A stretch of 64,000 bases of DNA from IMGVR_UViG_3300044213_000107:62001-126000; one strand, 5' to 3'. Counted from the first letter of the stretch, positions 5,793 to 64,000 are shown. Numbers and translations are program-made. Notes: generated from the sequence alone by a model not told the origin.

Positions 5793-6011
5793 TTATTTAT
5801 TGCGATATATGATGCGTCCACGGTTTATATCGTAAGGGCTCATTTCTATTTCTACGCTATCGCCCAATAATATACGTATATTATTTTGTCTAAGTTTACC
5901 ACCTAGTGTGGCTAGTACTACATGCCCAGTTTCTAATTGAACTCTAAACATCGCACTGGGCAGTACTTCGTCTATAGTGCCAGACATTTTAATTAAATCT
6001 TGTTTCGCCAT
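5793..6011 (-). CDS. infA: Translation initiation factor IF-1
   Basis: [24 protein letters not shown]...[16 protein letters not shown]...SPYD...GRIIYR. Confidence 0.97.
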
Positions 6012-6174
6012 CGTTTACTTTCGTAAGGAACCACGTGCCATCACCTTTGTCTGTCCACTTCAACGTATCTCCTTCTTTCCATCCTTTTAAATCAAGTAAT
6101 TCTTGCGGTAGTGGTAAAATCAAATCATCACTGCCGTCATCTGCTTCTTCAATTGCAACCGTCCATTGTGTCAT
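5989..6174 (-). CDS. AbrB/MazE/SpoVT-like small DNA-binding protein
   Basis: [25 protein letters not shown] swapped-hairpin pattern. Confidence 0.6.
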
Positions 6175-6187
6175 ATAGTATTTACAC

Positions 6188-6580
6188 TTATCCGCGACGC
6201 ATACGGCTAATTTCTACTGCTTCTTCTTCGGCAAAAACAGGTACAGCATTGCTCTTGTGCATGGTAGCAATACCCAATACCTTAGTGCCAGTATAAACTT
6301 TATGAACTGGAGCAGTAGAATGTCCGGGTGTTGACACGCTAGGTAAATGATTGAGATTGCCACGACCTGCGGGTGCGGATAATTTATATGATAACGGCTC
6401 TGCGGTCATTGCTCGGCGTTGGCGACGTGCATCTGCTTCAGCACCTTGGCGTTTAAGAAGTTCTTGCCATTCGCGATCTAACTGCTCGTGACGACGTTTG
6501 TCTTCGGCTGATTTGAATTTAACTTTACCTCGGCGCTTGCCTGTTAAACTTAGTGCAGGGTGTGCTAGATGCATGGTCAT
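6188..6580 (-). CDS. Phage hypothetical protein
   Basis: C-terminal YTGTKVLGIATMHKSNAVPVF motif recalled from T4-like phages; has its own sigma70 promoter. Confidence 0.6.
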   Translation of the reverse strand: MTMHLAHPALSLTGKRRGKVKFKSAEDKRRHEQLDREWQELLKRQGAEADARRQRRAMTAEPLSYKLSAPAGRGNLNHLPSVSTPGHSTAPVHKVYTGTKVLGIATMHKSNAVPVFAEEEAVEISRMRRG

Positions 6581-6607
6581 AGAAGTATCTCCGCTTAATA
6601 TAATTGT

Positions 6608-6636
6608 ATTATAACATTAGACGCAGAAACCGTCAA
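6608..6636 (-). promoter_or_regulatory. sigma70-type promoter TTGACG-17-TATAAT
   Basis: Read directly on the minus strand upstream of 6580. Confidence 0.8.
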
Positions 6637-7010
6637 GACTGTTGTTGTTTTTTAGCAACATCTTCATTTAGTGGTTGAGGAACAAAATCTGGGCTAACCA
6701 GTGCATAGTTAGCAGTAATAAACACATGATCAACAAATCTTGATTTCAATACTGAGACAATTTCATCTGTGTTTTTGCCTTGTGCAATAAATTGATTGGT
6801 GTCTTTATCAAACCAATAGTAGATATCACCAATTTTTTCTTGGTTTACCATATGTATTCGACGGTTTACTTCTTCGGCTACTTTATTATAAAATTTACCG
6901 CGACGATCAAAATAATTGTCCACTAGTGCCAATAAAAAAGAAAGCACAAAATACCAAAGTACACATTGTAAGACAAAGTCGATAAATTCCATAGTTGTAT
7001 TTATGTCCAT
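6633..7010 (-). CDS. Hypothetical protein with N-terminal transmembrane helix
   Basis: Hydrophobic N-terminus; coupled to neighbouring genes. Confidence 0.6.
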   Translation of the reverse strand: MDINTTMEFIDFVLQCVLWYFVLSFLLALVDNYFDRRGKFYNKVAEEVNRRIHMVNQEKIGDIYYWFDKDTNQFIAQGKNTDEIVSVLKSRFVDHVFITANYALVSPDFVPQPLNEDVAKKQQQS

Positions 7011-7831
7011 AATGATTTACGTATTTTAATGAGACGCATTAGCATATCATTGTCTTCTTGCTCGGCGTTGTTTTCTAACTCGGAGATACAATCATATAAC
7101 TTGCGTTTACGATCTTTTTCTTTTTGTGTTAGATTAACACGATTTTCAAATTCCCAATCCGAACCATACTTTTCAGTTATTTCTTTGCTAAATTCTCTAT
7201 AACCAGATTCTATCCAGGCAAAATCTTCATCACGATCTCGCCGCACCTGTGTCCACCATGTGTATAACAACAATACTTCCCTTGCGTAATCGGCTTGGCC
7301 CGGATTCCTTTCTTGCGGATCTTTGTCGGCACTGTCTAGGTCAATTTGCCATTTTAATTGTGCTATACCCGCACCCGGAGATCTCCATAGACTCCAACGT
7401 AATAGGCCATAATGTCTCCACCACGGGACTCGATATCGTCGGGCATTTTCATCATTCCATATACAAAACATCCACGCACATTCTACTTCAACAAAGTTTG
7501 TTAATTCAGTAAATGCACCCCGGAGTATTTTTTCATCAAATTCATGATGGCGTCCGGGCTCAAGATTTGTGTGAACATAATGGCTACGATACACAAATCG
7601 CATACGTAAATAGTAGGCTAGATCATTTATAGGATCAACTATCCAATCTCTGGGTTTTTCCAACAAGTCTGGCAAGGTTTCTGTTAGCCAAAAAGCAACA
7701 GGTCGTGCGGATTTAAGATCCTGCTCCCATACTTCCCACTGTCCAAAAGGTAGTGCAGCTGGTTTGTTGATTCCAAGTAGTGATCTAAACCAAATGAAAA
7801 ATTTTGAATTGCTGTAGCATCTACTCATCAC
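7001..7831 (-). CDS. Hypothetical Trp-rich protein
   Basis: 276-aa ORF in a coupled operon. Confidence 0.65.
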   Translation of the reverse strand: MMSRCYSNSKFFIWFRSLLGINKPAALPFGQWEVWEQDLKSARPVAFWLTETLPDLLEKPRDWIVDPINDLAYYLRMRFVYRSHYVHTNLEPGRHHEFDEKILRGAFTELTNFVEVECAWMFCIWNDENARRYRVPWWRHYGLLRWSLWRSPGAGIAQLKWQIDLDSADKDPQERNPGQADYAREVLLLYTWWTQVRRDRDEDFAWIESGYREFSKEITEKYGSDWEFENRVNLTQKEKDRKRKLYDCISELENNAEQEDNDMLMRLIKIRKSLWT

Positions 7832-9120: not shown

Positions 9121-9157
9121 AGTGTTATTATACTACAAAAACTTGAATTTTTTACAC

Positions 9158-10330: not shown

Positions 10331-11434
10331 TTAGGTAATATTTAAAACTTGTGCCAAATAAGGATCGTAGTCAAGGAGAGATTTTCTAATAGGACTAAAT
10401 TGTACAATGTATTCTCTTAACTTTTCTATAGATGATGGATCTTGATTTTTGCCAATAAGTTGATAATAGTGGTCAAACTTTGAGTTAGAATTTGCTATAT
10501 CAATTAAAGAACTATTTTGAGGCCATTGAATTAAAGACATAAAACTTGGATTATTTAATGTATAAATTTTTAAATTTAAATTTAAAGAATTACAATATGT
10601 ATCAAGTTTGTGCAAATCATTTATATTTAACACACTTAAGGTACAATGTACCTGTAGATAATCTACTGTAGATTTGTAAAATTTTATATTACGATCTATA
10701 TCGTTCCATACACTTCCGTATCGTAACCACTCCGATTTCCGCCCAACTGCATCTAGACTTATAAACACGCAAACATAATTCCATATATTTTTTTCAAATA
10801 ATGTAGAATTAATTTTAGTTCCGTTAGTATGAAATTCAATCCTTGTTCTTTTAGATAAATTTAATTTTACTAACATTGATAAAAAATCTAATACAGATGG
10901 ATTATAAATAGGTTCTCCGCCGATTAGTGTCAGTGTAACAATATCGTGATAATCATAACTTTTAAGTATATTCTTTTTAAGATCAGGCCAATTCTTATTG
11001 AATTCTTTATTCGGATCAGTAAATGACACTGGTAGTATACCGATTAATCGTTTATGTTGAGCAATAACAGAACTCGAAGATTCGCCGCAAGTCCAGCAGG
11101 CTAGATTGCATATATTTCCAAATTTTAAATTCCACCTACTAGGCCATAATCCAAAATTTTTGTTTATAATAACCTGATCGTCAACTGCAGTTCTAAAACT
11201 ACTACCACTAAAAGATTCTTGTATCTTACAGCTGGCACATTCGTTTAACCAAGTCTGATTGTATAAACTATTTTTAAATGCTAATAGTCGATCATCCGCC
11301 CACCATTCTTCAAATGATTGATCTTCTAAACTATTGATTGTTGGAGATGCACTACAACAATTTCTAAATTGTGTATTTAATCCTGAAAATGCTTCAACGA
11401 ATGGAACCACACAAAATGGTTTATTAAAACTCAT
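10331..11434 (-). CDS. Radical SAM protein with N-terminal SPASM/twitch-like Cys cluster
   Basis: CNLACWTC (CxxxCxxC), GGEP and TNGT motifs; N-terminal FCVVPF...NCC...CASC. Confidence 0.9.
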   Translation of the reverse strand: MSFNKPFCVVPFVEAFSGLNTQFRNCCSASPTINSLEDQSFEEWWADDRLLAFKNSLYNQTWLNECASCKIQESFSGSSFRTAVDDQVIINKNFGLWPSRWNLKFGNICNLACWTCGESSSSVIAQHKRLIGILPVSFTDPNKEFNKNWPDLKKNILKSYDYHDIVTLTLIGGEPIYNPSVLDFLSMLVKLNLSKRTRIEFHTNGTKINSTLFEKNIWNYVCVFISLDAVGRKSEWLRYGSVWNDIDRNIKFYKSTVDYLQVHCTLSVLNINDLHKLDTYCNSLNLNLKIYTLNNPSFMSLIQWPQNSSLIDIANSNSKFDHYYQLIGKNQDPSSIEKLREYIVQFSPIRKSLLDYDPYLAQVLNIT

Positions 11435-24777: not shown

Positions 24778-24912
24778 TTAAATTACTACATAATCTTCTT
24801 TACCGCAACCGCACTCTGGACAAGTAAAATCTTCGGACAATTCATCCCATGCTCCTTCAGCAGCTTCATCGTGTTCGTGTCCGCAGACTACGCATACATG
24901 TGTTTCACTCAT
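24778..24912 (-). CDS. Rubredoxin (44 aa, not in the ORF track)
   Basis: MSETHVCVVCGHEHDEAAEGAWDELSEDFTCPECGCGKEDYVVI; two CxxCG knuckles; ATGA overlap with rubrerythrin. Confidence 0.9.
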   Translation of the reverse strand: MSETHVCVVCGHEHDEAAEGAWDELSEDFTCPECGCGKEDYVVI

Positions 24913-25361
24913 TTCAATTCTCCTAGTTTAGTTTGATATGCTGCCGCATGACGCTTCTCTACTTTTGCTAGAGCCGCAAAACGCTTTTCTGCTTTGGCCA
25001 AAACTTCGGCAAACTGTTCGGCGTGTTCTTTAGATTCGTCAATTTGTTCCTGTGCTACTTGTGCCGCTTCTAAAGCACCTTCTGCAACTGCTTTTGCATG
25101 AAACTCTGGGTACATAGTAGTAAACTCGTATGTTTCACCTTCGATTGCTTTTTCAAGACATTCTTTGGTTGTTGGTTTGCCAATCAGCAATTCCAAATGA
25201 CCCCAAGCATGTAGCAGTTCTTGGTCTGCTGTATGCCAAAAGTGTTTAGCAATATCTTCATATCCTTCTTCACGAGCAATCTTAGCAAAGTAACGATACT
25301 TTATATGTGCTTGTGATTCTCCGGCCAATGCGGCTTCTAAATTTTTAATAGTAATTGACAT
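24909..25361 (-). CDS. rbr: Rubrerythrin family ferritin-like protein
   Basis: NLEAALAGESQAHIKYRYFAKIAREEG...ELLHA...GETYEFTTMYPEF...EHA; promoter TTGACA-18-TATAAT at 25393-25422. Confidence 0.92.
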   Translation of the reverse strand: MSITIKNLEAALAGESQAHIKYRYFAKIAREEGYEDIAKHFWHTADQELLHAWGHLELLIGKPTTKECLEKAIEGETYEFTTMYPEFHAKAVAEGALEAAQVAQEQIDESKEHAEQFAEVLAKAEKRFAALAKVEKRHAAAYQTKLGELK

Positions 25362-25476
25362 AAGTCCTCCTTTGATTAGTATTAATACTAATATTATATA
25401 TGACAAAAATACCTATTGTCAACTTGGTTTCAATAGTTTTTTACTGAATATTTTTTTATGGGCCTAATAGAAGAAA

Positions 25477-26595
25477 TCAATTATCGCCCATTAATTCGTA
25501 TAGTTCTGGCAAGTACTCTCGCCAATCCATACCGTGATAATTTCGTGTATGTTCCATGTATCTGTAAAATTTTTTTCTACATTGTAGATCAAATGCACTA
25601 TTATCTATATATGCTTTTAAAAAATGTAAATCATTGTCATTTAAATAGCTAGATATTTTATCTTTTTCTTGTTCTGTTAAAATTGAATATGTTAAATATG
25701 GTGGATAACTCACAAAACCTATTTCATTAGTTAAAGAGATGCCAAGATTTTTCATATATTCGATATATTCTACTACACCAAATAAATTTAATATACTGTG
25801 TGTTGGATGAGATGCTAGATTAAATCCTTGAGATTTAAAATCAATTAAATTTAGATTGAATTTATTCCAGTCAGCACCTGTTCGTATAAATTCAAATTTT
25901 TTCTCAATTGCTTCAAAACTAACAACTAAATTAATTTTATTAAATTTTTTTAATATCGGAATATCTTTATAACTTACTGTTCCGTTTGTGTTAATATTTA
26001 AACAAGTATCGGGCCCTGCTGAATCTAATACCTTTTCTAAAAAAATACTTAACTTATTCATATTATACAACGGCTCTCCACCTATTATATTAACAAATTT
26101 TAAATTTTTAAAATCATCATCAGTGTAATCATAAACTGCAGATGGCCAAACATCTAAATTTTCAATTGACACACTAATGTCGTAATTATAAATTGTATTC
26201 GGTAATTTTAAAGCTTCGGGTATCCAACTACTGCTAGATGACGGGCGGCAATATCTACATTGGATATTACAATATCTTCCTGTATCAACAGTTAATTGCA
26301 TAAAATCTTGTACATTTGATTCTGTAGAATATAAATCTATGTAATTGGCTAAACTTAATCGTTTGCTGAAATTTTTCCCAGGGTGTAGAATTTCAGCATT
26401 ACGACATGTAGTACAATATTTTTCTGGCCATTCACCTTGGTCAAACGACTGTTTTATTTCATTGTAAACAGGACTTTGCAGCATTTTAGTGCGACTTGTT
26501 ATATTGGGTATGGGTTGAAAGCAGCACGGACCTTGGAATTGAGCATCGTATGCGTGTTCGAAATACCAGCAACGTATAGGTTCTTTTTGATTCAT
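25477..26595 (-). CDS. Radical SAM protein with N-terminal twitch/SPASM-like cluster, AT-rich
   Basis: CNIQCRYC, GGEPL and TNGT motifs; N-terminal C...PCC...CTTC. Confidence 0.9.
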   Translation of the reverse strand: MNQKEPIRCWYFEHAYDAQFQGPCCFQPIPNITSRTKMLQSPVYNEIKQSFDQGEWPEKYCTTCRNAEILHPGKNFSKRLSLANYIDLYSTESNVQDFMQLTVDTGRYCNIQCRYCRPSSSSSWIPEALKLPNTIYNYDISVSIENLDVWPSAVYDYTDDDFKNLKFVNIIGGEPLYNMNKLSIFLEKVLDSAGPDTCLNINTNGTVSYKDIPILKKFNKINLVVSFEAIEKKFEFIRTGADWNKFNLNLIDFKSQGFNLASHPTHSILNLFGVVEYIEYMKNLGISLTNEIGFVSYPPYLTYSILTEQEKDKISSYLNDNDLHFLKAYIDNSAFDLQCRKKFYRYMEHTRNYHGMDWREYLPELYELMGDN

Positions 26596-26613
26596 ACAAA
26601 TATTTAGTATATA

Positions 26614-26636
26614 AGAAACCCGCCGAAGCGGGTTCT
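26614..26636 (-). terminator. Intrinsic terminator after the tmRNA
   Basis: AACCCGC-TTCG-GCGGGTT followed by TCTT on the minus strand. Confidence 0.85.
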
Positions 26637-26958
26637 GGTTGTTTCTGTTACGAGGTATTTCCTACCCTAAGCAGTGTTTAGGCTGCTAAGGCAAATAGTG
26701 AGTCATTTGCATTTACTTGTTTTGCTTCTTTTACGGAGATCGCCTACCGAGCGCCATTATTCCTACTCCTGACCCTGTCGAACCTATTTCCGGCCCATCA
26801 AAAACATACTATCCTACACTCACTTACGATCGGCGTAACCAGCGGTAGTTAAAAACCTGCTCATGCGTTCCTATAGTATGCTTTTGGTGGACCGGGCGGG
26901 GAACCGCCCCCCGCGTCCAGAATCCATTTCCTAATAACAGTTTACGCTGTTCTTTGTA
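26637..26958 (-). ncRNA. ssrA: Circularly permuted (two-piece) tmRNA; tag (A)ANDSLFALAA
   Basis: The acceptor piece ends CCGGTCC-A-CCA (26885) and is followed by an 88-nt intervening hairpin. The coding piece starts GGGCCGG (26796), giving a 7-bp stem with G3:U70. Tag ORF GCA AAT GAC TCA CTA TTT GCC TTA GCA GCC TAA at 26710-26678. Outer boundaries are approximate. Confidence 0.92.
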
Positions 26959-27004
26959 GTATATATTTATTTCTAATAGGAGTCAAGTCTATAGGCAATA
27001 AATG

Positions 27005-35449: not shown

Positions 35450-35484
35450 TTACAATATTCTGATAATATTGTATTTAGCGTCAG

Positions 35485-36048: not shown

Positions 36049-36056
36049 ACGAATAT

Positions 36057-36533: not shown

Positions 36534-36534
36534 A

Positions 36535-36690: not shown

Positions 36691-36759
36691 TGTGTGACTC
36701 CTATTATATAAGTGTTTGTACTAAGATATTTATCTCAGTGTTTCTACTAATATATAATA

Positions 36760-36778
36760 TTATATTGCGTTGCCGCAA
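36760..36778 (-). promoter_or_regulatory. Operator-like motif TTGCGGCAACGCAATATAA inside a TTGACT-16-TATAAT promoter
   Basis: Matches 42759-42777 at 16 of 19 positions. Confidence 0.55.
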
Positions 36779-36787
36779 AAAGTCAAA

Positions 36788-37396: not shown

Positions 37397-37442
37397 AATC
37401 GTGCCTTATTTTTAGATATTTATAAAAATTTACAAATACCAT

Positions 37443-37468
37443 AAAAAAACGCCCTTGCGGGCGTTTTA
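37443..37468. terminator. Intrinsic terminator
   Basis: AAAACGCCC-TTGC-GGGCGTTTT. Confidence 0.85.
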
Positions 37469-37486
37469 GTGAGAACGATTAACTTA

Positions 37487-38308: not shown

Positions 38309-38371
38309 TGAAACTCCTTGTTAACGTAAGAGTATTTATGAACTGTTTATGTGGATTACAAAATCTTTACA

Positions 38372-39283
38372 TTACTGGTAAGGAACATATGCAGGAATGG
38401 TTTCTAGGCCAAGTTGGCGTGCACGAGTAATCCTATGATTGCCATCTAATGCCCAACCATTGCCATCTACTACCACTGGCTTTTTGGCAATATCTTCGGG
38501 AGTAATTCGATTTATGTGTTCCCAGTCTAGACTAATATATCTACGATGTGGGTCATCTTGATGGTAGTATTCTGGAGTATTAATATCCGACAATGGTAGT
38601 TCTACAAATTGCCAAAATGGATGTTCTAGCACCGGATCATCTAAATGAAACTCATTGTGAATACCTTTAACAAACTTTAATAGTCGGCGTCCACTAACCA
38701 CATGTGGAAATTTACGATGTTCTATTTCCACGGTATGATCAATCATGTGTGGATGGATACGCCCTACCAGTGCAAGATCTAATTCTTTTAATACACGATC
38801 ACATTCGGCGTCTTTGTATAATATACCAATTCCGCCCCAGCTACGCCATAGTGCAATATTAGTAGGGTAATCGTCTATTAGTATGTTAGGTGTGCTGTCT
38901 GGACGTTTAGCATATTGATATTTTTCGTGTGTAAACAATATTTCTTCAGGCGGCATGTTTTTAAAATAATGATTTAACCATTGAGTTTTTTCATCACTGC
39001 TGCCTTCTACATCACTCATCAGCGGACTGCTTAAAATATTGTATTCGCCGGCACGTTGTAGTATGCCTTTGATTAAATGTGTGGCGTTTGGTAATAATGG
39101 TAAATTACGAAAGAAGCCCGACTTTTTTGCATGTTGACTTATTCCACCACCTTTGTGTACATCACGAAACTTTTTAACATGATGCTGGCGTGCAACTTCC
39201 CCAAAAAAGTCCGCTAACACGCCATCCATGTCTACATAGATAAGTGAATCTGTTTTGGTACTAGATACTTCAAAAGCTTTCAT
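38372..39283 (-). CDS. HAD-family 5'(3')-nucleotidase-like domain fused to a ParB/Srx-like domain
   Basis: YVDMDGVLADF and LIDD motifs; C-terminal PVVV...LDGNHR. Confidence 0.8.
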   Translation of the reverse strand: MKAFEVSSTKTDSLIYVDMDGVLADFFGEVARQHHVKKFRDVHKGGGISQHAKKSGFFRNLPLLPNATHLIKGILQRAGEYNILSSPLMSDVEGSSDEKTQWLNHYFKNMPPEEILFTHEKYQYAKRPDSTPNILIDDYPTNIALWRSWGGIGILYKDAECDRVLKELDLALVGRIHPHMIDHTVEIEHRKFPHVVSGRRLLKFVKGIHNEFHLDDPVLEHPFWQFVELPLSDINTPEYYHQDDPHRRYISLDWEHINRITPEDIAKKPVVVDGNGWALDGNHRITRARQLGLETIPAYVPYQ

Positions 39284-39301: not shown

Positions 39302-39892
39302 CTATCTTCGCTCCACAATACGATCCGCAAGTCCATACGCAACTGCTTGCTCTGCACTCATAAAGAAATCACGTTCCATATCTGCAGAAATTTCATCAAA
39401 TGTTTTTCCTGCACTATTGTGGCTAACATAAATCTGTGTAAGATTCTTCTTTAAAGCTAAGATTTCCTCAACTTGGATCAGCATATCTGTGGCTTGTCCA
39501 CGTGCGCCGCCCGATGGCTGATGAATCATGTGACGAGCATTTGGCAAGATCAATCGTTTCCCGGCAGCACCGGCGTTTGCAAGTAAGCTTCCCATACTGC
39601 AGGCCTGGCCCATAACAATGGTAGATACATCAGGCTTAATGAACTGCATAGTATCATAGATTGCCATGCCAGCAGTGACAACTCCACCGGGTGAGTTGAT
39701 GTAAAAGAGGATGTCTGCATCTGGATCTTCGCTTTCTAAAAAAAGTAATTGACTAACAACAAGACTAGCAGAATGTTCGTTAACATCTGTGTCTAGCATT
39801 ACAATGCGGTCTTTGAGTAAACGACTATAGATGTCGTAAGCTCGTTCACCGTTTGAAGTTTTTTCTAGTACGGTTGGTACAAAATTTGGCAT
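39302..39892 (-). CDS. clpP: ATP-dependent Clp protease proteolytic subunit
   Basis: [33 protein letters not shown] and ERDFFM. Confidence 0.97.
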
Positions 39893-39931: not shown

Positions 39932-40417
39932 TCAGCACTTTGTAAAGTCTTGATGGCGAAACCAACGTCGTTGTCCGTGGCTTGTTTTAAGATGTAGCCC
40001 ATAATATTCAAATTCTTCTCGCCAGGCAAAAAAACTAGGTCCGTGCCCTCCCGAATACTCATGTATGTGCCCGCCCTGTGCCCAACGATGAATGTCCCAT
40101 TGCCACTGATGCACCATTTCATGAGCGAGTGTGTTTAAACACCATTGAGCGCAAAACCATTTATCGCTCATCCGTATTATGGTATGCGACCCAGACTCTT
40201 GTTCTTGATCTTCCCAACTGCAGTTTGCCCAGCATTTATGAATTATGCCTAATTTAATTTCGGGCTTTTGTAATTGATTTTTAAATAAATGACGATTAAT
40301 TATATTATATGCGTAGTTAATATCAGCGTCAGAAGGGCGGAATAATTTGCGTCTTTGATAGGTTTTTGGTGGCAGTGGTGCCAGCATAATTGAACGTATT
40401 GGATTGGGTCTAGCCAT
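39932..40417 (-). CDS. SprT-like zinc metalloprotease
   Basis: TLAHEMVHQ...HGPSF. Confidence 0.85.
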   Translation of the reverse strand: MARPNPIRSIMLAPLPPKTYQRRKLFRPSDADINYAYNIINRHLFKNQLQKPEIKLGIIHKCWANCSWEDQEQESGSHTIIRMSDKWFCAQWCLNTLAHEMVHQWQWDIHRWAQGGHIHEYSGGHGPSFFAWREEFEYYGLHLKTSHGQRRWFRHQDFTKC

Positions 40418-45267: not shown

Positions 45268-46002
45268 TTAATCGAATCGTATGCTAATTACATGTTCGTA
45301 ATTCTTCTTGATTAAACTCTTGTACATTAAATTTTTATGTACAGTAAATCCAAATGCCCCGGCTGCAGATGTAAAATTTGCTAACTGTTTAAAAAACATA
45401 CTGCGGCGATCAAATGGACCAACTGTGGTTAAATCTGTACCTGATATACCATATACCATAGTTGTCCAACTGTTGCGATCTATAGTGCTGTATTCATGGG
45501 CTTCTAGATAAATGGTTTTTTCTGCGTCGGATCTAATAACACTTGGATAACTAAACTCGCGCTCTTTGTAATCTTGGTTTTTATAATCCTTACAAGTAGT
45601 TATCACTAAATCTGTGGCCAGGCTGCAAATTTCAGTAACGCTATCACGTTGGTTTTGATCTGTTTTTGCAAAAGTAAAATATTCATCAAATGCTACCACA
45701 GTGTTAAAAGATTTTCTATGATCGGCTAAATCGCCAAACTCGATTCTAGTAAACTTTATATCACGACTGGTAATATAATCGGCTACTTCATCACTGATAA
45801 GAGTAACTGATATATTTTTTGCATAGCCAGAAAGTATGGCCGGATTAAAGCCTACATATAATGTATTACCTAACGAAGTATTATGGTAAGCACTAACTTC
45901 CTCTAATATCTGAACTTTTTTATCTATTAATTCTGATTTTTTTGTTTGTTTTGCATATGCGGAAAACAAACAATCATTATAATCTAAAAACGACGCCATC
46001 AC
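45268..46002 (-). CDS. Hypothetical protein (possible methyltransferase-like fold)
   Basis: 244-aa ORF in the cluster; the fold is a weak inference. Confidence 0.5.
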   Translation of the reverse strand: MMASFLDYNDCLFSAYAKQTKKSELIDKKVQILEEVSAYHNTSLGNTLYVGFNPAILSGYAKNISVTLISDEVADYITSRDIKFTRIEFGDLADHRKSFNTVVAFDEYFTFAKTDQNQRDSVTEICSLATDLVITTCKDYKNQDYKEREFSYPSVIRSDAEKTIYLEAHEYSTIDRNSWTTMVYGISGTDLTTVGPFDRRSMFFKQLANFTSAAGAFGFTVHKNLMYKSLIKKNYEHVISIRFD

Positions 46003-49823: not shown

Positions 49824-50744
49824 ATGAAAATTAGTGATGTATTGAATGATGATATTTCTCGCCGTGGTTTTTTGCGTGGACTAGCAGGAGCTGCCGCAGT
49901 AGGTGCAACCGGGGCTCATGCTACTGCAAAATCTATTGTGTATCAAGTAGTAGAACCCGGTGACACTGTTTATTCAATTGCACAGCAAAATGGCATGCGG
50001 CCCGAAGATTTATTTCGGTTAAACAATCTAAACAAGAACTCTAAATTGATTCCCGGACAAAAAATACGTGTGCCGGATACATCAAAAATGATTCCTGATC
50101 CTGCGGTACAAATTCCCACTGATGAATTAGGAAACTTTATTTCTAGCATTGATCAACACAAAGTTGATCAAATAATGCATAGATATGTTACAGCCAAAGA
50201 AAAAGAATCGATCATCCCACCTCCCGCAGACTCACACAAAAAATCAACTGCTAAATCTCACGAATACAAGCCAGTGACAAACAGTCCGTTTGAGTTGGTG
50301 TTGCGCAATGTTGCCATGCGTGCAGGAATTATTAAATCAGAATTGGCTGCATTTATGGGGCAATGTGCACACGAATCAGCAAAATTTACCACAGTAAAAG
50401 AACTAGACAGTGGCAGTAAATATGAAGGTCGTCGTGACATAGGAAACATTTATCCCGGGGATGGACAAAAATACAAAGGTCGTGGATTTATACAAATTAC
50501 CGGCAGATATAATTATACAGAAGCGTCCAAGGATCTGGGAATAGATCTAGTCAATCATCCCGAGCTAGCCGAAAGACCTGATGTAGCAGCTCGTGTGAGT
50601 ATTTGGTTCTGGCAAAAATTTGTTCAACCAAAGATTAAAAATTGGGCCGATAATCGTGCAGTTACTCGTGTAATCAATCCAGGATTACGTGGTGAAAAAA
50701 ATCGAGAAAAATATACTCAAAGTTTTAAAACAGCCGGGCTATAA
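49824..50744 (+). CDS. LysM plus glycoside hydrolase family 19 peptidoglycan hydrolase with a twin-arginine motif
   Basis: SRRGFL; VEPGDTVYSIA LysM; AAFMGQCAHES...YKGRGFIQITGRYNY. Confidence 0.9.
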   Translation: MKISDVLNDDISRRGFLRGLAGAAAVGATGAHATAKSIVYQVVEPGDTVYSIAQQNGMRPEDLFRLNNLNKNSKLIPGQKIRVPDTSKMIPDPAVQIPTDELGNFISSIDQHKVDQIMHRYVTAKEKESIIPPPADSHKKSTAKSHEYKPVTNSPFELVLRNVAMRAGIIKSELAAFMGQCAHESAKFTTVKELDSGSKYEGRRDIGNIYPGDGQKYKGRGFIQITGRYNYTEASKDLGIDLVNHPELAERPDVAARVSIWFWQKFVQPKIKNWADNRAVTRVINPGLRGEKNREKYTQSFKTAGL

Positions 50745-51342: not shown

Positions 51343-51343
51343 T

Positions 51344-54987: not shown

Positions 54988-55875
54988 TCATTCGTTCATC
55001 CTAAATCTTATGTATTCTGTTAATTTGTCAGCTACATCAATTTCGCAATATTTTTCAAATCCACCAAAACCTGGATTACTATTTGCTTCACAAACAACAA
55101 AACCATTTTCTCCAAATAGTAAATCAACTCCAGCAATGTTTAATCCTAGTACTCGTGCAGTTTCAATGGCCAGGTACTCAATTTCTGGTGTGACTTCAAA
55201 ATTAGCACCTGTACCACCTCCGGTAATATTTGCACGAAAATCACCTTCAGGAGCTGTACGCTTCATGGCACCCAATACCCGCCCGCCAATTACAAACACA
55301 CGCAGATCTTCTCCTGGCCTAGCACTCATATACTCCTGTACAATCATTGTTTTTTTAGCGCCAAGCGTATCAATAAATTCCATTAATTTTTTATAATCTC
55401 TTTTACGTTCGCATAGATATACGCCTTCGCCGTAGCTGCCGGTGACCAATTTTACCACACAAGGAAATCCTATGTGTTGTTCAACTAGGCCGTCATCAAT
55501 AGGATAGCGTACCATCATGGTCTTGGGAATCGGTATGTTACTTGCGGCCAACCGTTGTCCTGTTCTTAATTTGTCACGAACTATATTAATGCTTACACTC
55601 GGATTAACGCACGGAACGCCCATTTGCTCAAATTGTCTAATAATTGCTAACTGAAATGGTAAAATACCAGCACCCAATCTTACTAAAACTAGATTTGGTG
55701 TTGGTAAGTCTTGCCCTTTGTATTTTACAGATTCTTGAAGATTTTTGCTGACTACAATGTCAAAGTCGTCAGGATGTGCAACTGTTGTGGTTATTCCTTT
55801 GCTGGAAAAACTATCTACTAGCCTGCTGGTTTCGTATTCATTACGTTCTTGTTTTGATATTATCAATACTGTCAT
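54988..55875 (-). CDS. rimK: RimK family ATP-grasp alpha-L-glutamate ligase
   Basis: RDKL, IPKT, PCVVK..GSYGEGV, VQEY, DLRVFVIG, FRAN, AGVD and EANSNPG motifs. Confidence 0.9.
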   Translation of the reverse strand: MTVLIISKQERNEYETSRLVDSFSSKGITTTVAHPDDFDIVVSKNLQESVKYKGQDLPTPNLVLVRLGAGILPFQLAIIRQFEQMGVPCVNPSVSINIVRDKLRTGQRLAASNIPIPKTMMVRYPIDDGLVEQHIGFPCVVKLVTGSYGEGVYLCERKRDYKKLMEFIDTLGAKKTMIVQEYMSARPGEDLRVFVIGGRVLGAMKRTAPEGDFRANITGGGTGANFEVTPEIEYLAIETARVLGLNIAGVDLLFGENGFVVCEANSNPGFGGFEKYCEIDVADKLTEYIRFRMNE

Positions 55876-59658: not shown

Positions 59659-59964
59659 TTAACCTCGTTCACATACCACGGTATAAAAACTATCTAGTTC
59701 TCCACCAAATTTTCCCATTAGATGTTCAGCAATATCCCTGCACAATTTGTAATTTTCTTGTGCTGCCGAAGCCAAAAACTCGTCATGAAACCGGCGCCAG
59801 TAATCGAGCATTTCTATTTCTTTTGTGGGTATCCTTGCAGTCTCAACTACACAATAGGGTTCTAAGGATTGTCCATTTTCTGCAACTATTGTTTCTAGTT
59901 TAAAAATAGTAAATTGCCCATCTAACTCAGATGGCAACATAGACTTATCAAATATAATATTCAT
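59659..59964 (-). CDS. Hypothetical protein
   Basis: Likely start MNIIFDK; ends GKFGGELDSFY. Confidence 0.6.
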   Translation of the reverse strand: MNIIFDKSMLPSELDGQFTIFKLETIVAENGQSLEPYCVVETARIPTKEIEMLDYWRRFHDEFLASAAQENYKLCRDIAEHLMGKFGGELDSFYTVVCERG

Positions 59965-60497
59965 TGTTTTTGTATTCCTAATTTGCGATAAACCTGTTGA
60001 ACTGCAATGGCTTGGCTTACACAATCTTCTAAAGCGTTATGCAGTCCTGCTTTGCCTTTGACCCTAGGATCACCGTGCACACCAAACAAGGTGCGACTAT
60101 CACGTATTTGCCAAAACTGCCAGGGTGTGGGCCAGCCATATTGACGATATAGGTTTTCTAAGATGGCAATATCAAACACCGGACCTTGTGCCCAAATATT
60201 ATTTACACCAACTAAAAATCTGTTCAATTGACGATACATTTCCTCTACAGGAACGCGACCTTCGGTGCCCAGTGCTTCTTCGCGAACGTCATCGGCTTGG
60301 TCCATCCACCAACGAACAGTATCATCTTGTACTTCACGACCACGAGCAATCTGCTCATCCACATCCGGTCTAATGTATAAACCAGGTCCAGGGTCAGTTA
60401 AAGTAAAAGGATTAAATTTAACTGCGCCCAGTGTAAGTATAACACACTCTGGGCGAGTTCCTAAGGTTTCTAAATCAAGCATACAATCTTGTGTCAT
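59961..60497 (-). CDS. DEDDh 3'-5' exoribonuclease (RNase T/Rv2179c-like)
   Basis: MLDLETLG, WAQGPVFD, RDSRTL and HNALEDC motifs; promoter TTGACA-17-TATAAT at 60504-60532. Confidence 0.9.
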   Translation of the reverse strand: MTQDCMLDLETLGTRPECVILTLGAVKFNPFTLTDPGPGLYIRPDVDEQIARGREVQDDTVRWWMDQADDVREEALGTEGRVPVEEMYRQLNRFLVGVNNIWAQGPVFDIAILENLYRQYGWPTPWQFWQIRDSRTLFGVHGDPRVKGKAGLHNALEDCVSQAIAVQQVYRKLGIQKQ

Positions 60498-60994: not shown

Positions 60995-61830
60995 AATACT
61001 TCCTATTATCTTTTAATGTATTTTTTGCATAGTATGCAATGTATGCTTGTTCAAATGAATTGGTTGGTATAGTTGTATAGTCTTCATCTGATTCAATTTT
61101 TTTTATAATTTCTTTTACTTTAGACCAAGAATGGTATGCTTTATTTTTACTCATAAATTGATTCCAAAATTCCATCAAACCAACCGTGTCTATGTCTGTA
61201 TCAACATCTAAAAACTTTTTAATTTTTATTAACTCATCTATTAATGATTGAAAATTAAAAAAATTATTCATTTTTACATGTATACATTCCATGCTTGAAT
61301 CCATCCACTCATTAATAAATTTACAATGCGGCGATGCATTTATGAACCAATAGAGCTGAGTTGCCACTTCAAATGTAGTATAATTTTTTTTTATCTCCAC
61401 AATTTTGAATAAAACTATCTACAAATGATTTGCTAATTTTTATAAATTTTTCTTGAGTGTTTATCTCTAAAGTGTCTAAATCTATATTATTATCATTGAC
61501 AGTATACCATGTATTGTATTCTAACAAGTATTCCGTGTCTACGTCTATTCGTATTAAACCATAGATTGGGAAATCGACAATATTATCCGACTTATAAATT
61601 TTTTTATACTCGTCACTAACAAAATGCGAAGCAGATTTATGATATGCAACAGTGTTCTTTGAACGTTGATAATCTAAATTATTGAAAGCATTATGACTAG
61701 AACCAACTTCTGTTAGTGGATTGAATGCTTTAGCACTTGGTAACTCCAACAAAAATCGATTTATCAGGTAATCTAAAAAAATGCCATGAGATCCAGGATA
61801 GTAATCAATTTGAAGTTGAGAAAACCTCAT
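60984..61830 (-). pseudogene. AT-rich gene apparently split by a +1 frameshift in an A9 tract (ORFs 61369-61830 and 60984-61400)
   Basis: GAT AAA AAA AAA TTA: removing one A fuses the two ORFs. The second ORF has no obvious RBS. Confidence 0.55.
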
Positions 61831-62144
61831 TAACTATCCTGTTCCAATTTAATTTGTAAAGGGAACCCGTTATTTCGAGCAAGTAGCGTTGCTTCGACAC
61901 CTTTTTGCTCAGCTAACTCAAAAGGCAAAGTAATAACCACTGCAGAACCTTCTTCGTGTATTTTCATAGTTAACTCAACTGCAGTTTCTTCGGTGTGATC
62001 AAAAATAGTTTTAAGAGATTCAACTACAAATTCCATGGTTGTTTGGTTATCATTTAGATAAATGACATTAAACAATTTTGGAGGTGCAAGATCTAATTTT
62101 GGTTCAATACAAGTACGAGTCAAAGTTTCTGTGTTAGTTGTCAT
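61830..62144 (-). CDS. clpS: Clp protease adaptor ClpS
   Basis: FNVIYLNDNQTTMEFVV...IHEEG.A...AEQK...PL. Confidence 0.95.
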   Translation of the reverse strand: MTTNTETLTRTCIEPKLDLAPPKLFNVIYLNDNQTTMEFVVESLKTIFDHTEETAVELTMKIHEEGSAVVITLPFELAEQKGVEATLLARNNGFPLQIKLEQDS

Positions 62145-62162
62145 AATTTGTCTTTAAGTTAG

Positions 62163-62184
62163 AAAGGGGAGTTGCCTCCCCTTA
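62163..62184. terminator. Intrinsic terminator after hsp20
   Basis: AAGGGGAG-TTGC-CTCCCCTT. Confidence 0.8.
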
Positions 62185-62201
62185 TTATACTGCAACCTAG
62201 A

Positions 62202-62642
62202 TTATTTTGCAAATGTTATTGCAATTTTTTTAGGTTTGTCTTCTTCTGGAACTACTTGTTCAAGAGCAATAGCCAAAATACCATTTTTAACTGTTGCACC
62301 ACGAACTTCAATGTGTTCGGCTAAAGGGAATGTGCGCACAAAATTGCGAGCCGAAATACCTTTGTGTAGATATTCTACATCATCGCGTTTTGCTTGCTCA
62401 CCTTTAACTGTAAGCACATTTTCTTTGAGTTCTACGTCAATTTCACTTTCGTTAAAACCAGCGACTGCAACTTCGATTACATAATGTGTGTCATCAATTT
62501 TGACTACATTATGTGGTGGATAATTGCCGTCTGTTTTGCTGTTTGCAAAAGTGCGATTTAACTGCTCAAACAAGTTGTCAAAGCCAATGGCATGACGGTG
62601 TAAAGAGGGTAAATCAATCGTGTGAAGTGTAAAATTTGTCAT
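62202..62642 (-). CDS. Small heat-shock protein Hsp20 (IbpA/B-like)
   Basis: IGFD, YPPHNV, AVAGF, YLHKGISARNF and NGIL motifs; start MTNFT. Confidence 0.93.
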   Translation of the reverse strand: MTNFTLHTIDLPSLHRHAIGFDNLFEQLNRTFANSKTDGNYPPHNVVKIDDTHYVIEVAVAGFNESEIDVELKENVLTVKGEQAKRDDVEYLHKGISARNFVRTFPLAEHIEVRGATVKNGILAIALEQVVPEEDKPKKIAITFAK

Positions 62643-62733
62643 TTTTGTTTCTCCTTTATAAGCAAGTTTTATGACTAAGTTGTGTAGCCCACTATTGGCA
62701 CTACACATTTATTTATTATACACAGAAAAAATC

Positions 62734-62973
62734 TTAATACAATCTTTTTGGTAAACTATCTGCTTCGATTTTCTTTTGCCAGCGACGCTTGGCTTGACTA
62801 CGTGCTTTTTTACGAGCAGTAGTGGGTTTTTCGTAAAATTCTTTTTCACGAAGTTCTTGTATTAATCCAGTTTCTTGGATTTTCTTTTTAAATTTGCGCA
62901 GGGCTTTTTCTACGTTATCGTAGCTAACGTAAACTGTTAGACCTCGTTTGCGACTTCTATTATCGTATGTCAT
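62734..62973 (-). CDS. rpsU: 30S ribosomal protein bS21
   Basis: NVEKALRKFKK...ELREKEFYEKPT..RK. Confidence 0.93.
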   Translation of the reverse strand: MTYDNRSRKRGLTVYVSYDNVEKALRKFKKKIQETGLIQELREKEFYEKPTTARKKARSQAKRRWQKKIEADSLPKRLY

Positions 62974-62974
62974 A

Positions 62975-64000
62975 TTATGTGTAAATTGGTTCAGTTTTAT
63001 ATTTAACTGTTTCAGCAGTTATTTGTATTTTTTTATAGCCGGCTTGTTTAATTTCGGATATTTTATACAAAAATGGTTGTAAAGTTCTCTCTATGATGCT
63101 TTTTAATGCTCTAGCACCTATTTTCATGCTTGCAGCTTCTTCCGCAATGGTTTTTACAGCTTCTGGTGTAAATTCTAATGCAACCGAGTCTGCTTCAAAA
63201 TAAAACTGCATTTGTTTAATTAAATTGTTTTTTGGTTTAATCAGTATACTAACAAAATCATCTAGAGTTAATTTATTTACAGAAACCAAAACAGGAAATC
63301 TACCTACAAATTCAGGAATCATTCCATACTGTATAAAATCTTCCCAGTCAGCGGTGTCAGAAGTTTTTATGTTATTAGTAGTTGATCTAAACCCTATGCC
63401 GGTTCCGCGGCATCGTTGTTCTATAATTCGATCTAGATCACTAAATGCTCCACTGGCTATAAACAGTATGTTTGTTGTATCTATATCAATTTGGTCCAAG
63501 CTAGGATGTTTTTTGTTATTGCCAATTGGTACTCTGCATACTGTACCTTCAACTAGTTTTAATAGTGCCTGTTGTACACCCTCACCACTAACATCTCGAG
63601 TAATACTAGGCCCTTCGCTTTTACGGCCAATTTTATCTATTTCATCTAAAAATACAATTCCGCGTTGGCATGCTTCTACATCGTAATCTGCTTCAGCAAA
63701 TAAACGAGCAATCATGGTATCTACATCATCGCCAACATACCCCGACTCGGTTAATGTTGTTGCATCGGCAATAACAAACGGTACATTCAAGTATCGTGCA
63801 ATAGTTCGTGCTAATAATGTTTTCCCTGATCCAGTTGAACCAAATAACAATATATTACTTTTTTCTAATTCTACACGACTGTTAAAAAATACACGTTTAT
63901 AATGATTTGTGACCCCGACACTCAATGCTATTTTTGCAGCATCTTGGCCAATTACGTATAAATCTAAAAACTGTTTTATCTTAACAGGATCTAATGCTCG
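62975..64000 (-). CDS. clpX: ATP-dependent Clp protease ATPase ClpX (5' end outside the window)
   Basis: YVIGQD, KSNILLFGSTGSGKT, DATTLTESGYVG, DEIDKI, RDVSGEGVQQALLK and GARAL; frame open to 64000. Confidence 0.95.
   Translation of the reverse strand, partial: RALDPVKIKQFLDLYVIGQDAAKIALSVGVTNHYKRVFFNSRVELEKSNILLFGSTGSGKTLLARTIARYLNVPFVIADATTLTESGYVGDDVDTMIARLFAEADYDVEACQRGIVFLDEIDKIGRKSEGPSITRDVSGEGVQQALLKLVEGTVCRVPIGNNKKHPSLDQIDIDTTNILFIASGAFSDLDRIIEQRCRGTGIGFRSTTNNIKTSDTADWEDFIQYGMIPEFVGRFPVLVSVNKLTLDDFVSILIKPKNNLIKQMQFYFEADSVALEFTPEAVKTIAEEAASMKIGARALKSIIERTLQPFLYKISEIKQAGYKKIQITAETVKYKTEPIYT

What the first reader, a model, noticed from the sequence alone, without database searches (positions are those of the whole stretch)
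5793..64000. Near-complete phage-owned translation-rescue and proteostasis circuit
Seen: ssrA, ClpX, ClpP, ClpS, Hsp20, IF-1, bS21 and a RimK-like ligase all lie in one 64 kb window, with clpX-rpsU-hsp20-clpS adjacent. Established: tmRNA-tagged proteins are degraded by ClpXP, ClpS delivers N-degron substrates, RimK glutamylates bS6, and bS21 and IF-1 act in initiation. Inference: the phage installs its own tagging, degradation and ribosome-tuning system, possibly to keep translating when host defences cleave tRNA or mRNA.
Basis: partly seen in the sequence, partly recalled or inferred. Interest (0 to 1): 0.62.

Follow-up and report, generated by a model that had tools for sequence, protein, structure and literature searches.

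The report
Jumbo-phage proteostasis and translation genes
A large uncultured phage carries intact, conserved copies of bacterial protein-degradation (ClpXP, ClpAP-ClpS), chaperone, tmRNA, IF-1 and ribosomal bS21 genes, but this cargo is already known from jumbo phages, the rescue partner SmpB is missing, and nothing shows the genes act as one circuit.

Summary

- **Parts found:** IF-1, a two-piece (permuted) tmRNA with tag ANDSLFALAA, ClpP, a RimK-family ligase, and the tight block clpX-rpsU-hsp20-clpS. All motifs checked are intact.
- **Missing:** SmpB, SspB, DnaK, Aat, ArfB, IF-3 and PDF. SmpB is absent from every near-complete relative.
- **Conservation:** the Clp, Hsp20, bS21 and IF-1 genes are conserved and syntenic across about 20 related viral contigs.
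- **Deep core:** across more distant relatives it is tmRNA + ClpA + ClpP, usually with bS21-Hsp20-ClpS. ClpX is specific to this subclade.
- **RimK:** a horizontally mobile accessory gene. It fails the bS6-ligase equivalog threshold.

Each protein already has a PHROG family. Published jumbo phages list the same cargo, and bS21-Hsp20-Clp linkage has been reported.

This is a new member of a known kind, of moderate interest.

The parts
5793..6011 (-). infA: translation initiation factor IF-1, 72 aa
   Evidence: PF01176 77 bits and TIGR00008 101 bits against a cut-off of 61. 68% identical in the complete relative G001, where it is also next to the SOD-like gene. Falls in phrog_30201.
26609..26986 (-). 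Two-piece (circularly permuted) tmRNA gene with its own promoter-like site and terminator hairpin. Layout: -35 at 26986-26981 and -10 at 26963-26958; acceptor piece about 26948-26885, ending in CCA; 88-nt intervening segment 26884-26797; coding piece from 26796; tag ORF 26710-26678 (ANDSLFALAA plus stop); hairpin 26635-26609.
   Evidence: RF01850 115 bits and RF04321 125 bits. Coordinates; promoter-like site and hairpin. A G3-U pair can be read in the acceptor stem (GGGCCGG against CCGGUCC). The inter-piece helix covaries across 72 family members.
39302..39892 (-). clpP: ClpP peptidase, 196 aa, with no propeptide
   Evidence: PF00574 259 bits. NF001368 298 bits against a cut-off of 249. The head-maturation ClpP-like model scores only 99 against 120. 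Ser-His-Asp triad motifs GQACSMG, IHQP and ERD. 69% identical in G001.
54988..55875 (-). RimK-family ATP-grasp alpha-L-glutamate ligase, 295 aa; an accessory gene of unknown substrate
   Evidence: TIGR00768 227 bits against a cut-off of 143. The bS6-Glu ligase equivalog NF007764 scores 179 against 331. Absent from G001. 84% identical in the otherwise unrelated phage G006. 47% identical to cyanophage 'S6 glutaminyl transferase'.
59961..60497 (-). Rv2179c-like 3'-5' exonuclease, syntenic with the block
   Evidence: PF16473 119 bits. Lies next to clpS or rpsU in most relatives.
61830..62144 (-). clpS: ClpA adaptor, 104 aa
   Evidence: PF02617 84 bits. Best solved match is A. tumefaciens ClpS2, 4yjm. 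The pocket reads NDNQTTMEF...KIH, against E. coli NDDYTPMEF...AVH. Predicted to bind the phage ClpA N-domain.
62202..62642 (-). hsp20: IbpA-like small heat-shock protein. The ORF is open to 62708; the likely start is at 62642, after an AAAGGAG Shine-Dalgarno sequence.
   Evidence: PF00011 73 bits. IbpA model 143 bits, below its cut-off of 212. Start site. Falls in phrog_432.
62734..62973 (-). rpsU: ribosomal protein bS21, 79 aa, with a basic N-terminal extension of about 9 aa and a C-terminal RLY
   Evidence: PF01165 63 bits and TIGR00030 64 bits against a cut-off of 29. 75% identical in G001, the 90th percentile. Its start lies 1 nt after the clpX stop.
62975..64000 (-). clpX: C-terminal 341 codons. 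The full gene is 400 aa and continues 177 nt past the window end (L005:1975-3177).
   Evidence: NF003745 514 bits against a cut-off of 359. Zinc finger CxxC...CxxC, GSTGSGKT, FLDEID, GYVG, KKH loop, IGF loop and Arg finger.

Best explanation
The window is part of an uncultured myovirus of about 350 kb.

**Shown**
- The lineage stably carries host-like protein quality-control genes: ClpP, two unfoldases (ClpX and ClpA), the ClpS adaptor, an IbpA-like sHsp and a DnaJ-type co-chaperone.
- It also carries translation add-ons: a two-piece tmRNA, IF-1, bS21 and 25 tRNAs.
- The genes are intact and conserved.
- Real clusters are few: clpX-rpsU-hsp20-clpS, and clpA-dnaJ outside the window.
- The phage ClpS-ClpA interface is computationally plausible.

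**Inferred**
- The products work as their bacterial counterparts do and plug into host partners.
- The tmRNA, which has its own sigma-70-like promoter, would be alanylated by host AlaRS and delivered by host SmpB. It would add a tag ending in ALAA.
- Tagged peptides would be degraded by ClpXP or ClpAP of phage or host origin.
- ClpS would steer ClpAP towards N-degron substrates.
- Hsp20 and DnaJ would hold unfolded proteins.
- bS21 and IF-1 would top up or bias initiation on host ribosomes.
- The net effect would be to sustain and redirect translation and proteostasis through a long infection in which host supplies decline.

The genes are not one operon or one closed circuit. RimK is a mobile accessory gene.
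For: **Identity and intact motifs**
-.

**Phage nature**
- Major head protein, tail sheath, tail tube and terminase.
- DNA polymerase is 52% identical to that of phage Phosso.

**No host contamination**
- GC and GC3 of all key genes equal the phage average.
- Synteny holds in about 18 independent contigs.

**Conservation**
- In G001 (354 kb, 100% complete) ClpA is 70% identical, ClpP 69%, IF-1 68%, Hsp20 68%, ClpS 66%, ClpX 65% and bS21 75%, against a genome median of 55%.

**tmRNA under selection**
- At least 119 viral contigs share its tRNA-like domain.
- 58 of 68 tags end in LAA.
- Two inter-piece base pairs covary: 71/72 and 68/72 canonical, with 4 or more pair types each.

**Dependence on the host**
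- SmpB is absent from G000, G001-G005 and G011-G026, five of which are at least 90% complete.

**ClpS-ClpA N-domain model**
- ipSAE 0.81 against a best control of 0.27. That mark was reached by 51 of 78 solved complexes and 2 of 108 mismatched pairs.
- The runs agree in at least 93% of contacts and the partner's pLDDT is at least 87.
- A like complex is solved for E. coli, so this shows likeness, not binding.

**Literature**
- The same cargo is reported in AP-J-162 (PMC11242549).
- Huge phages carry it too (PMC7162821).
- A phage bS21 enters E. coli 70S ribosomes, as cited in PMC9723584.
Against: - There are no expression or biochemical data.
- The host is unknown, so the phage tag cannot be compared with the host tag.
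- The tmRNA T-loop reads GGCGGUU instead of the near-universal UUCGANU. That could impair SmpB, EF-Tu or tertiary contacts, although two divergent family members share the variant.
- ClpS has Asn where E. coli has Asp36.
- ClpA, ClpS, Hsp20 and ClpP score below the strictest NCBIfam equivalog cut-offs.
- Most key genes lack an obvious Shine-Dalgarno sequence.
- 'Sustaining capacity' is a generic explanation that is hard to separate from targeted takeover.
Confidence: 0.6

Rival explanations
1. Counter-defence reading. The set exists mainly to keep translation going when host abortive-infection systems cleave tRNA or mRNA. The tRNA array replaces cut tRNAs, tmRNA frees ribosomes stalled on cut mRNAs, and ClpXP/ClpAP clears the tagged fragments.
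For: - 25 tRNAs sit together with the tmRNA.
- The tmRNA has an early-type sigma-70-like promoter.
- The tag degron is conserved.
- An exonuclease is syntenic with the block.
- From my own knowledge, the literature proposes that phage tRNAs counter tRNA-targeting defences.
Against: - No tRNA-repair genes were found: T4 Rnl1 is absent.
- There is no SmpB or ArfB, so rescue capacity stays limited by the host.
- No defence or anti-defence genes were identified next to these loci.
- The hypothesis predicts nothing specific about ClpS, Hsp20, DnaJ or bS21.
Confidence: 0.2
2. Targeted takeover. The phage Clp proteases, with ClpS and possibly unknown phage adaptors, selectively destroy host regulators, defence proteins or antitoxins, or time the turnover of the phage's own proteins. 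bS21 and IF-1 bias ribosomes towards phage mRNAs. The tmRNA is incidental.
For: - Two unfoldases plus an adaptor give wide substrate control.
- The ClpS pocket differs from E. coli's and is closest to the narrower-specificity A. tumefaciens ClpS2.
- bS21 is embedded in the protease/chaperone block across two clades.
- Published proposals exist for bS21-mediated preference for phage mRNAs (PMC7162821, PMC9723584).
Against: - All recognition loops are canonical rather than diverged.
- No candidate phage adaptors or substrates were identified.
- No Aat transferase is present to create N-degrons.
Confidence: 0.13
3. Loose cargo. The genes are independently acquired host-like morons with little or no functional coupling, and some, such as the tmRNA with its odd T-loop, are decaying.
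For: - The genes are scattered over 37-126 kb of the contig among unrelated auxiliary genes.
- RimK and IscA come and go between relatives.
- The T-loop is non-canonical.
Against: - Conservation is above the genome median and the order is collinear over about 55% median protein identity.
- ClpP, ClpA and ClpS are mutually dependent parts that are retained together.
- The tmRNA shows covariation and conserved tag ends.
- Active-site motifs are intact.
Confidence: 0.05

Closest known systems
Sinorhizobium jumbo phages AP-J-162 / Phosso and Agrobacterium phage Atu_ph07
   Same: - Closest cultured relatives by DNA polymerase, at 48-52% identity.
- AP-J-162 is reported with a tmRNA, six Clp ORFs including ClpX, Hsp20, DnaJ and bS21 (PMC11242549).
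- Phosso is annotated with ClpX, ClpA-like, ClpS and S21.
   Different: - Those phages are 470-490 kb and infect Rhizobiaceae.
- They carry IF-3, L7/L12 and PDF. None of these was found here for IF-3 and PDF; this phage carries IF-1 instead.
- Their clpX sits next to IF-3 and topoisomerase genes, not in a clpX-rpsU-hsp20-clpS block.
- Protein identities are only 43-48%.
bS21-encoding phages surveyed by Chen et al. 2022 (PMC9723584)
   Same: - Phage bS21 genes are common in aquatic phages.
- Within ten genes of bS21, Hsp20 (n=127) and two Clp protease pVOGs (n=50 and 47) are frequent neighbours. This is the same linkage as seen here.
   Different: - The focal clades of that paper infect Bacteroidetes and place bS21 among head and packaging genes.
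- Here bS21 is 1 nt downstream of clpX, inside a chaperone/protease block far from the head genes.
Pseudomonas jumbo phage PA5oct group, Salicola phage SCTP-2, Xanthomonas phage XaC1
   Same: They are annotated with ClpA and ClpS homologues, 42-43% identical to those here.
   Different: - They are different phage lineages.
- ClpX and tmRNA were not examined in them here.
Bacterial trans-translation plus ClpXP/ClpAPS (the E. coli paradigm)
   Same: - The parts and motifs match: tRNA-like domain with a G-U pair, and a resume codon GCA.
- The tag is AND...ALAA.
- ClpX has its zinc-binding domain and IGF loop, and ClpP has its catalytic triad.
- ClpS docks on the ClpA N-domain.
   Different: - No SmpB or SspB is present.
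- The tmRNA is two-piece and has a variant T-loop.
- ClpS has Asn at the position of Asp36.
Two-piece tmRNAs of aquatic phages, e.g. Methylophilales phage Melnitz (PMC9004378)
   Same: - The ssrA gene is permuted and lies after an early-type promoter in a T4-like aquatic phage.
- That paper counts 53 two-piece tmRNAs among 18,146 phage genomes.
   Different: - Melnitz ssrA is of the alpha-proteobacterial type and carries a glutamine riboswitch.
- This one scores best with the beta-type model, and no riboswitch was detected at gathering thresholds.
Cyanophage and pelagiphage RimK-like 'S6 glutaminyl transferase' (S-RIM8/12/32)
   Same: 47% identical. It belongs to the same RimK family and to phrog_2599.
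   Different: No phage RimK has a demonstrated substrate. This copy fails the bS6-ligase equivalog cut-off.

Membership tests
tmRNA, permuted two-piece form (Rfam RF04321 / RF01850) | Covariance-model score above the curated gathering score | tested here: met
   125 bits against 47, and 115 bits against 84.
tmRNA, permuted two-piece form (Rfam RF04321 / RF01850) | tRNA-like domain: acceptor stem with a G3-U pair, encoded CCA end, and a T-arm with a 7-nt loop | tested here: met
   GGGCCGG pairs with CCGGUCC-ACCA, with G3 opposite U. The T-stem GCGGGG/CCCCGC closes a 7-nt loop. The loop sequence GGCGGUU departs from the UUCGANU consensus; it is shared with L076 and L078.
tmRNA, permuted two-piece form (Rfam RF04321 / RF01850) | Permuted gene order, acceptor 3' piece upstream of the coding piece, with the two pieces held by base pairing | tested here: met
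   CCA lies at 26885 and the coding piece starts at 26796, with 88 nt between them. The inter-piece pairs covary across 72 sequences.
tmRNA, permuted two-piece form (Rfam RF04321 / RF01850) | Resume codon and a short tag ORF ending in a hydrophobic-Ala-Ala degron | tested here: met
   GCA...TAA encodes ANDSLFALAA.
Complete trans-translation system | SmpB encoded alongside the tmRNA | tested here: not met
   PF01668 found nothing in G000, nor in 21 related records, five of them at least 90% complete.
ClpX (NF003745 / TIGR00382) | Equivalog score; C4 zinc-binding domain; one AAA+ module; GYVG pore loop; RKH-type loop; IGF loop | tested here: met
   514 bits against 359. Motifs were read; the RKH loop is KKH here.
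ClpP (PF00574 / NF001368) | Ser-His-Asp triad and a family score above cut-off; not a prohead protease | tested here: met
   298 bits against 249. TIGR00493 scores 288 against 309, just under. The head-maturation model scores 99 against 120. Triad confirmed.
ClpA (TIGR02639) | N-domain plus two AAA+ rings, no middle domain, ClpP-docking loop; equivalog score | tested here: inconclusive
   It is the best family by far, at 806 bits, but below the 993 cut-off. Full-length alignment covers 5-728. Both Walker A/B pairs, the KYR and GYVG loops and an IGF loop are present.
ClpS (PF02617) | ClpS fold; N-degron pocket residues (E. coli N34, D35, D36, H66); binding to the ClpA N-domain | tested here: inconclusive
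   Pfam 84 bits against 23, but all NCBIfam equivalogs are below cut-off. N, D and H are kept; D36 is Asn. The complex model passes at 0.81 against a control of 0.27.
Ribosomal protein bS21 (TIGR00030) | Equivalog score | tested here: met
   64 bits against 29.
IF-1 (TIGR00008) | Equivalog score; S1-like OB fold, about 72 aa long | tested here: met
   101 bits against 61, over the full length.
RimK, 30S protein bS6--L-glutamate ligase (NF007764) | Equivalog score for the bS6-modifying enzyme | tested here: not met
   179 bits against 331. Only the broad RimK-family subfamily TIGR00768 passes, at 227 against 143.
Small heat-shock protein (PF00011; IbpA NF008013) | Alpha-crystallin domain; IbpA equivalog | tested here: inconclusive
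   The Hsp20 domain scores 73 bits against 21 and is met. The IbpA equivalog scores 143 against 212 and is not reached.

The most novel reading that the evidence does not exclude
The deeply conserved block bS21-Hsp20-ClpS, with ClpX or DnaK slotted in, together with ClpA/ClpP and a phage-specific tmRNA lineage, could form a virus-run tagging and degradation pathway. The tmRNA lineage has its own tRNA-like domain, sometimes a variant T-loop, and sometimes 21-32-aa extended tags. Such a pathway would be coupled to phage-modified ribosomes and partly orthogonal to the host's, rather than simply topping up host functions.
Probability: 0.12. Interest if true: 0.75.

Novelty: new member of a known kind. 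Interest (0 to 1): 0.38.

Why it matters
If these genes are active, the phage brings both major Clp proteases, an adaptor, chaperones and a tagging RNA. That is a compact natural system for asking how a virus reshapes host proteostasis and ribosome rescue.

The comparative results give three testable points:
- The tmRNA always travels without SmpB.
- The tags keep the ALAA degron even in phages that lack ClpX.
- bS21 is physically linked to chaperone and protease-adaptor genes across clades.

The gene content itself is not new. Similar inventories are published for cultured jumbo phages.

Tried and rejected
- **Megablast against GenBank phages:** a 6-kb stretch found no match. Relatives appear only at the protein level.
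- **ARAGORN:** it finds no tmRNA in the window because of the variant T-loop. The Rfam models do find it.
- **Promoter scan of the clpX-clpS block:** 18 promoter-like sites against 17.3 expected. This gives no usable promoter call and no terminators between the four genes.
- **T4 late-promoter motif TATAAATA:** 6 sites against 7.9 expected, none near the key genes. Timing cannot be inferred.
- **Host identification through the tmRNA:** the 35-nt tRNA-like-domain pattern occurs in only one short MAG contig among 185,579 species genomes. The host stays unknown, and 'beta-type, proteobacterial' is only a lead.
- **G006 (178 kb):** fetched as a presumed close relative because its RimK is 84% identical. 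It shares only 59 of 363 ORFs and none of the Clp genes.
- **ClpP as a prohead protease:** rejected on model scores and on its distance from the head genes.
- **Host-DNA contamination or a chimeric contig:** rejected on GC3 and on synteny in independent contigs.

Full report
**What the window is.** The 64-kb window is bases 62001-126000 of a single 260,723-bp IMG/VR viral contig. The contig is linear, and CheckV estimates it at 74% complete. Its GC content is 38% and it has about 360 ORFs, 86% of them on the minus strand.
- PHROG matches to major head protein, tail sheath, tail tube, head-tail adaptor and a split large terminase show it is a tailed myovirus.
- By DNA polymerase, the nearest cultured phages are Sinorhizobium phage Phosso (52%), Agrobacterium phage Atu_ph07 (48%) and the Rak2/PBECO4-like phages (43%).
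- There is no nucleotide-level match in GenBank phages.

**Checking the observation.** All eight features exist.
- IF-1, bS21 and ClpX pass NCBIfam equivalog cut-offs.
- ClpP passes the ClpP subfamily cut-off and scores three times higher there than on the ClpP-like head-maturation model.
- ClpS and Hsp20 pass Pfam cut-offs.
- The ATP-grasp protein passes only the broad RimK-family model, not the bS6-ligase equivalog (179 bits against 331).
- ClpX is cut by the window end. The complete 400-aa protein has the following motifs:
  - the C4 zinc finger;
  - Walker A and B;
  - the GYVG pore loop;
  - a KKH version of the RKH loop;
  - the IGF ClpP-docking loop;
  - the arginine finger.
- ClpP has the Ser-His-Asp triad and no propeptide.
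- Hsp20 probably starts at an internal Met preceded by AAAGGAG.
- clpX, rpsU, hsp20 and clpS are adjacent on one strand. The gaps are 1, about 91 and 57 nt, and no terminator-like site lies between them.

**The tmRNA.** The gene at 26609-26986 (minus strand) is circularly permuted.
- It has a TTGACT-17-TATACT promoter-like site.
- The acceptor piece ends in CCA at 26885.
- An 88-nt intervening segment follows.
- The coding piece starts at 26796.
- The tag ORF encodes ANDSLFALAA.
- A GC-rich hairpin follows the ORF.
- The acceptor stem has the G3-U pair that AlaRS needs (read from the sequence).
- The T-loop reads GGCGGUU instead of UUCGANU, which is why ARAGORN fails. Two divergent relatives, L076 and L078, carry GGCGGUA and GGCAGUA, so this is a retained variant and not an assembly error.

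**The tmRNA lineage.** A 35-nt pattern from the tRNA-like domain occurs in at least 119 IMG/VR contigs, many of 200-380 kb. It occurs in only one short MAG contig among 185,579 prokaryotic species genomes. This is therefore a phage-borne tmRNA lineage.
- Among 68 tags called, 58 end in LAA and 66 end in AA.
- Two base pairs joining the two pieces covary strongly (71/72 and 68/72 canonical, several pair types) and are followed by a conserved G-A.
- The RNA is thus under structural and coding selection.

**The rest of the genome.**
- ClpA is present at contig 36800-39088 (762 aa). It has an N-domain, two intact AAA+ modules and an IGF loop, and TIGR02639 scores 806 bits. A DnaJ-type co-chaperone with the HPD motif lies directly next to it.
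- SmpB, SspB, DnaK, the Aat transferase, RF-1/ArfB, IF-3, PDF and T4 Rnl1 were not found.
- Twenty-five tRNAs lie at 195.7-204.2 kb.
- A structure-based test supports docking of phage ClpS on the phage ClpA N-domain.
  - ipSAE was 0.81 against a best control of 0.27. That mark was reached by 51 of 78 solved complexes and 2 of 108 mismatched pairs.
  - Runs agree in at least 93% of contacts, and the partner's pLDDT is at least 87.
  - The E. coli complex is solved, so this shows likeness rather than binding.
- The closest solved ClpS is A. tumefaciens ClpS2. The pocket keeps Asn, Asp and His but has Asn at E. coli position 36.

**Relatives of this clade.** Twenty IMG/VR contigs encode ClpX at 58-84% identity. 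In about 18 of them the order is the same: membrane protein, 127-aa ORF, clpX, rpsU, hsp20, clpS, Rv2179c-like exonuclease.
- G001 is 354 kb, 100% complete and collinear, with a median protein identity of 55%.
- It carries ClpA, ClpP, ClpX, ClpS, Hsp20, bS21, IF-1, DnaJ and the tmRNA.
- All except DnaJ are in the 71st-90th percentile of conservation.
- G001 lacks RimK and IscA.
- GC3 of the key genes equals the phage mean, so they are long-resident phage genes.

**The wider tmRNA-bearing group.** I surveyed 16 other large contigs with the same tmRNA lineage.

| Gene | Contigs with it (of 16) | Note |
|---|---|---|
| SmpB | 0 | three of the 16 are at least 90% complete |
| ClpP | 11 | all three complete ones |
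| ClpA | 7 | every contig of at least 126 kb |
| ClpS | 10 | the same ten contigs as bS21, 3-4 kb from it |
| bS21 | 10 | |
| ClpX | 1 | |

In the ClpX-less group the block reads membrane protein, 127-aa ORF, bS21, exonuclease and/or DnaK, Hsp20, ClpS. The DnaK gene was scanned in one contig only (L215, Hsp70 855 bits), and there the exonuclease is not in the block; in the three other contigs examined the exonuclease follows bS21 and the gene before Hsp20 was not scanned.
- The deep core is therefore tmRNA + ClpA + ClpP, usually with bS21-Hsp20-ClpS.
- ClpX is a subclade feature.
- The tmRNA does not depend on a phage ClpX.

**RimK.** RimK is 84% identical in G006, a 178-kb phage that shares only 59 of 363 ORFs at a median of 41% and none of the Clp genes.
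- It is 47% identical to 'S6 glutaminyl transferase' genes of T4-like cyanophages.
- It is a mobile accessory gene, and its substrate is unknown.

**How it most likely works.** The identities, intact motifs, conservation and clustering are shown. The rest is inferred.
- The parts act as their bacterial counterparts do and rely on host partners.
- Host AlaRS, SmpB and EF-Tu would serve the tmRNA.
- The ALAA tag can be read by ClpX or ClpA of either origin.
- From established E. coli work, ClpS shifts ClpAP away from ssrA substrates towards N-degrons.
- Hsp20 and DnaJ would feed host DnaK and ClpB.
- bS21 and IF-1 would join host 30S subunits. A pelagiphage bS21 has been shown to enter E. coli ribosomes (cited in PMC9723584).
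- I rate general support and redirection of translation and proteostasis during a long infection at about 0.6.

**Comparison with what is known.** Each protein already belongs to a PHROG family.
- AP-J-162 is published with a tmRNA, six Clp ORFs, Hsp20, DnaJ and S21.
- Huge phages are known to carry IF-1, S21 and tmRNA.
- Two-piece tmRNAs are known in aquatic phages.
- ClpA and ClpS are annotated in the PA5oct-like phages, SCTP-2 and XaC1.
- Hsp20 and Clp genes were reported as frequent neighbours of phage bS21.
- This is therefore a new member of a known kind.
- The points that may be new are modest:
  - SmpB is consistently absent.
  - The tmRNA lineage is specific to phages.
  - Some members have variant T-loops and extended tags.
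  - ClpX and DnaK are interchangeable in the bS21 block.

**Limits.** There are no expression data and no host assignment.

Noticed in passing
window 26896-26914 (minus strand); also L076 and L078: The tmRNA T-loop reads GGCGGUU where nearly all tmRNAs and tRNAs have UUCGANU. Two divergent phage tmRNAs have GGCGGUA and GGCAGUA, and seven others have UGCGARU. The window and L076 also share an altered D-loop-like stretch, AAnUAGG.
   Followed up: partly
L070, L065, L079, L132, L105, L113 and others (related viral contigs): Many phage tmRNAs of this lineage encode extended tags of 21-32 aa. An N-terminal module such as ANxxTF(D/E)(F/Y) precedes a canonical ...NDExFALAA end. G004's 32-aa tag ends in AAFA.
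   Followed up: partly
window 10331-11434 and 25477-26595; nine more across the contig: There are eleven diverged paralogues of a radical-SAM protein of about 370-420 aa in the 260-kb contig. One lies directly downstream of the tmRNA gene.
   Followed up: partly
L215:3987-5852 (G013) and neighbours: In one contig of the sister group that lacks ClpX (G013), a full DnaK (Hsp70, 855 bits) sits between bS21 and Hsp20-ClpS. The bS21 block therefore holds either ClpX or DnaK.
   Followed up: partly
window 54988-55875 and 37487-38308, against G006 (L206-L214): RimK and the secreted Endonuclease_NS gene are each 84% identical in a 178-kb phage that otherwise shares few genes at 41% median identity. 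This points to recent gene exchange between co-occurring phages.
   Followed up: partly
window 4893-5789 and 24909-25406: Oxidative-stress and Fe-S cargo is present: an Fe/Mn SOD-like gene next to IF-1 (adjacency conserved in G001), an IscA/HesB-type Fe-S carrier (absent from G001) and a rubrerythrin.
   Followed up: partly
window 39932-40417: An SprT-like metalloprotease gene lies about 40 nt upstream of clpP on the same strand.
   Followed up: no
G001 174391-174465 and G006 45498-45574 (relatives, not the window): ARAGORN calls a tRNA with anticodon CUA (labelled Pyl, i.e. an amber suppressor type) a few kb from the tmRNA in two other phages. None was called in this contig.
   Followed up: no
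contig 216530-219566 (L009/L010), outside the window: The large terminase is split into two ORFs by a 344-aa ORF, probably a homing-endonuclease-type insertion.
   Followed up: no
window 33233-37396 and 49824-50744: Further unusual cargo: an amidoligase-domain protein (738 aa), a GNAT acetyltransferase and a malonyl-CoA-decarboxylase-like protein. On the opposite strand there is a TAT-signal LysM plus chitinase-class-I-like protein, possibly the lysin.
   Followed up: no
L005:3143-5075 (contig 126143-128075), just past the window end: A 519-aa multi-pass membrane protein and a 127-aa ORF, with no Pfam match above cut-off and no PHROG match, always precede the bS21 block in both clades. The 127-aa ORF overlaps the clpX start by 35 nt.
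   Followed up: partly
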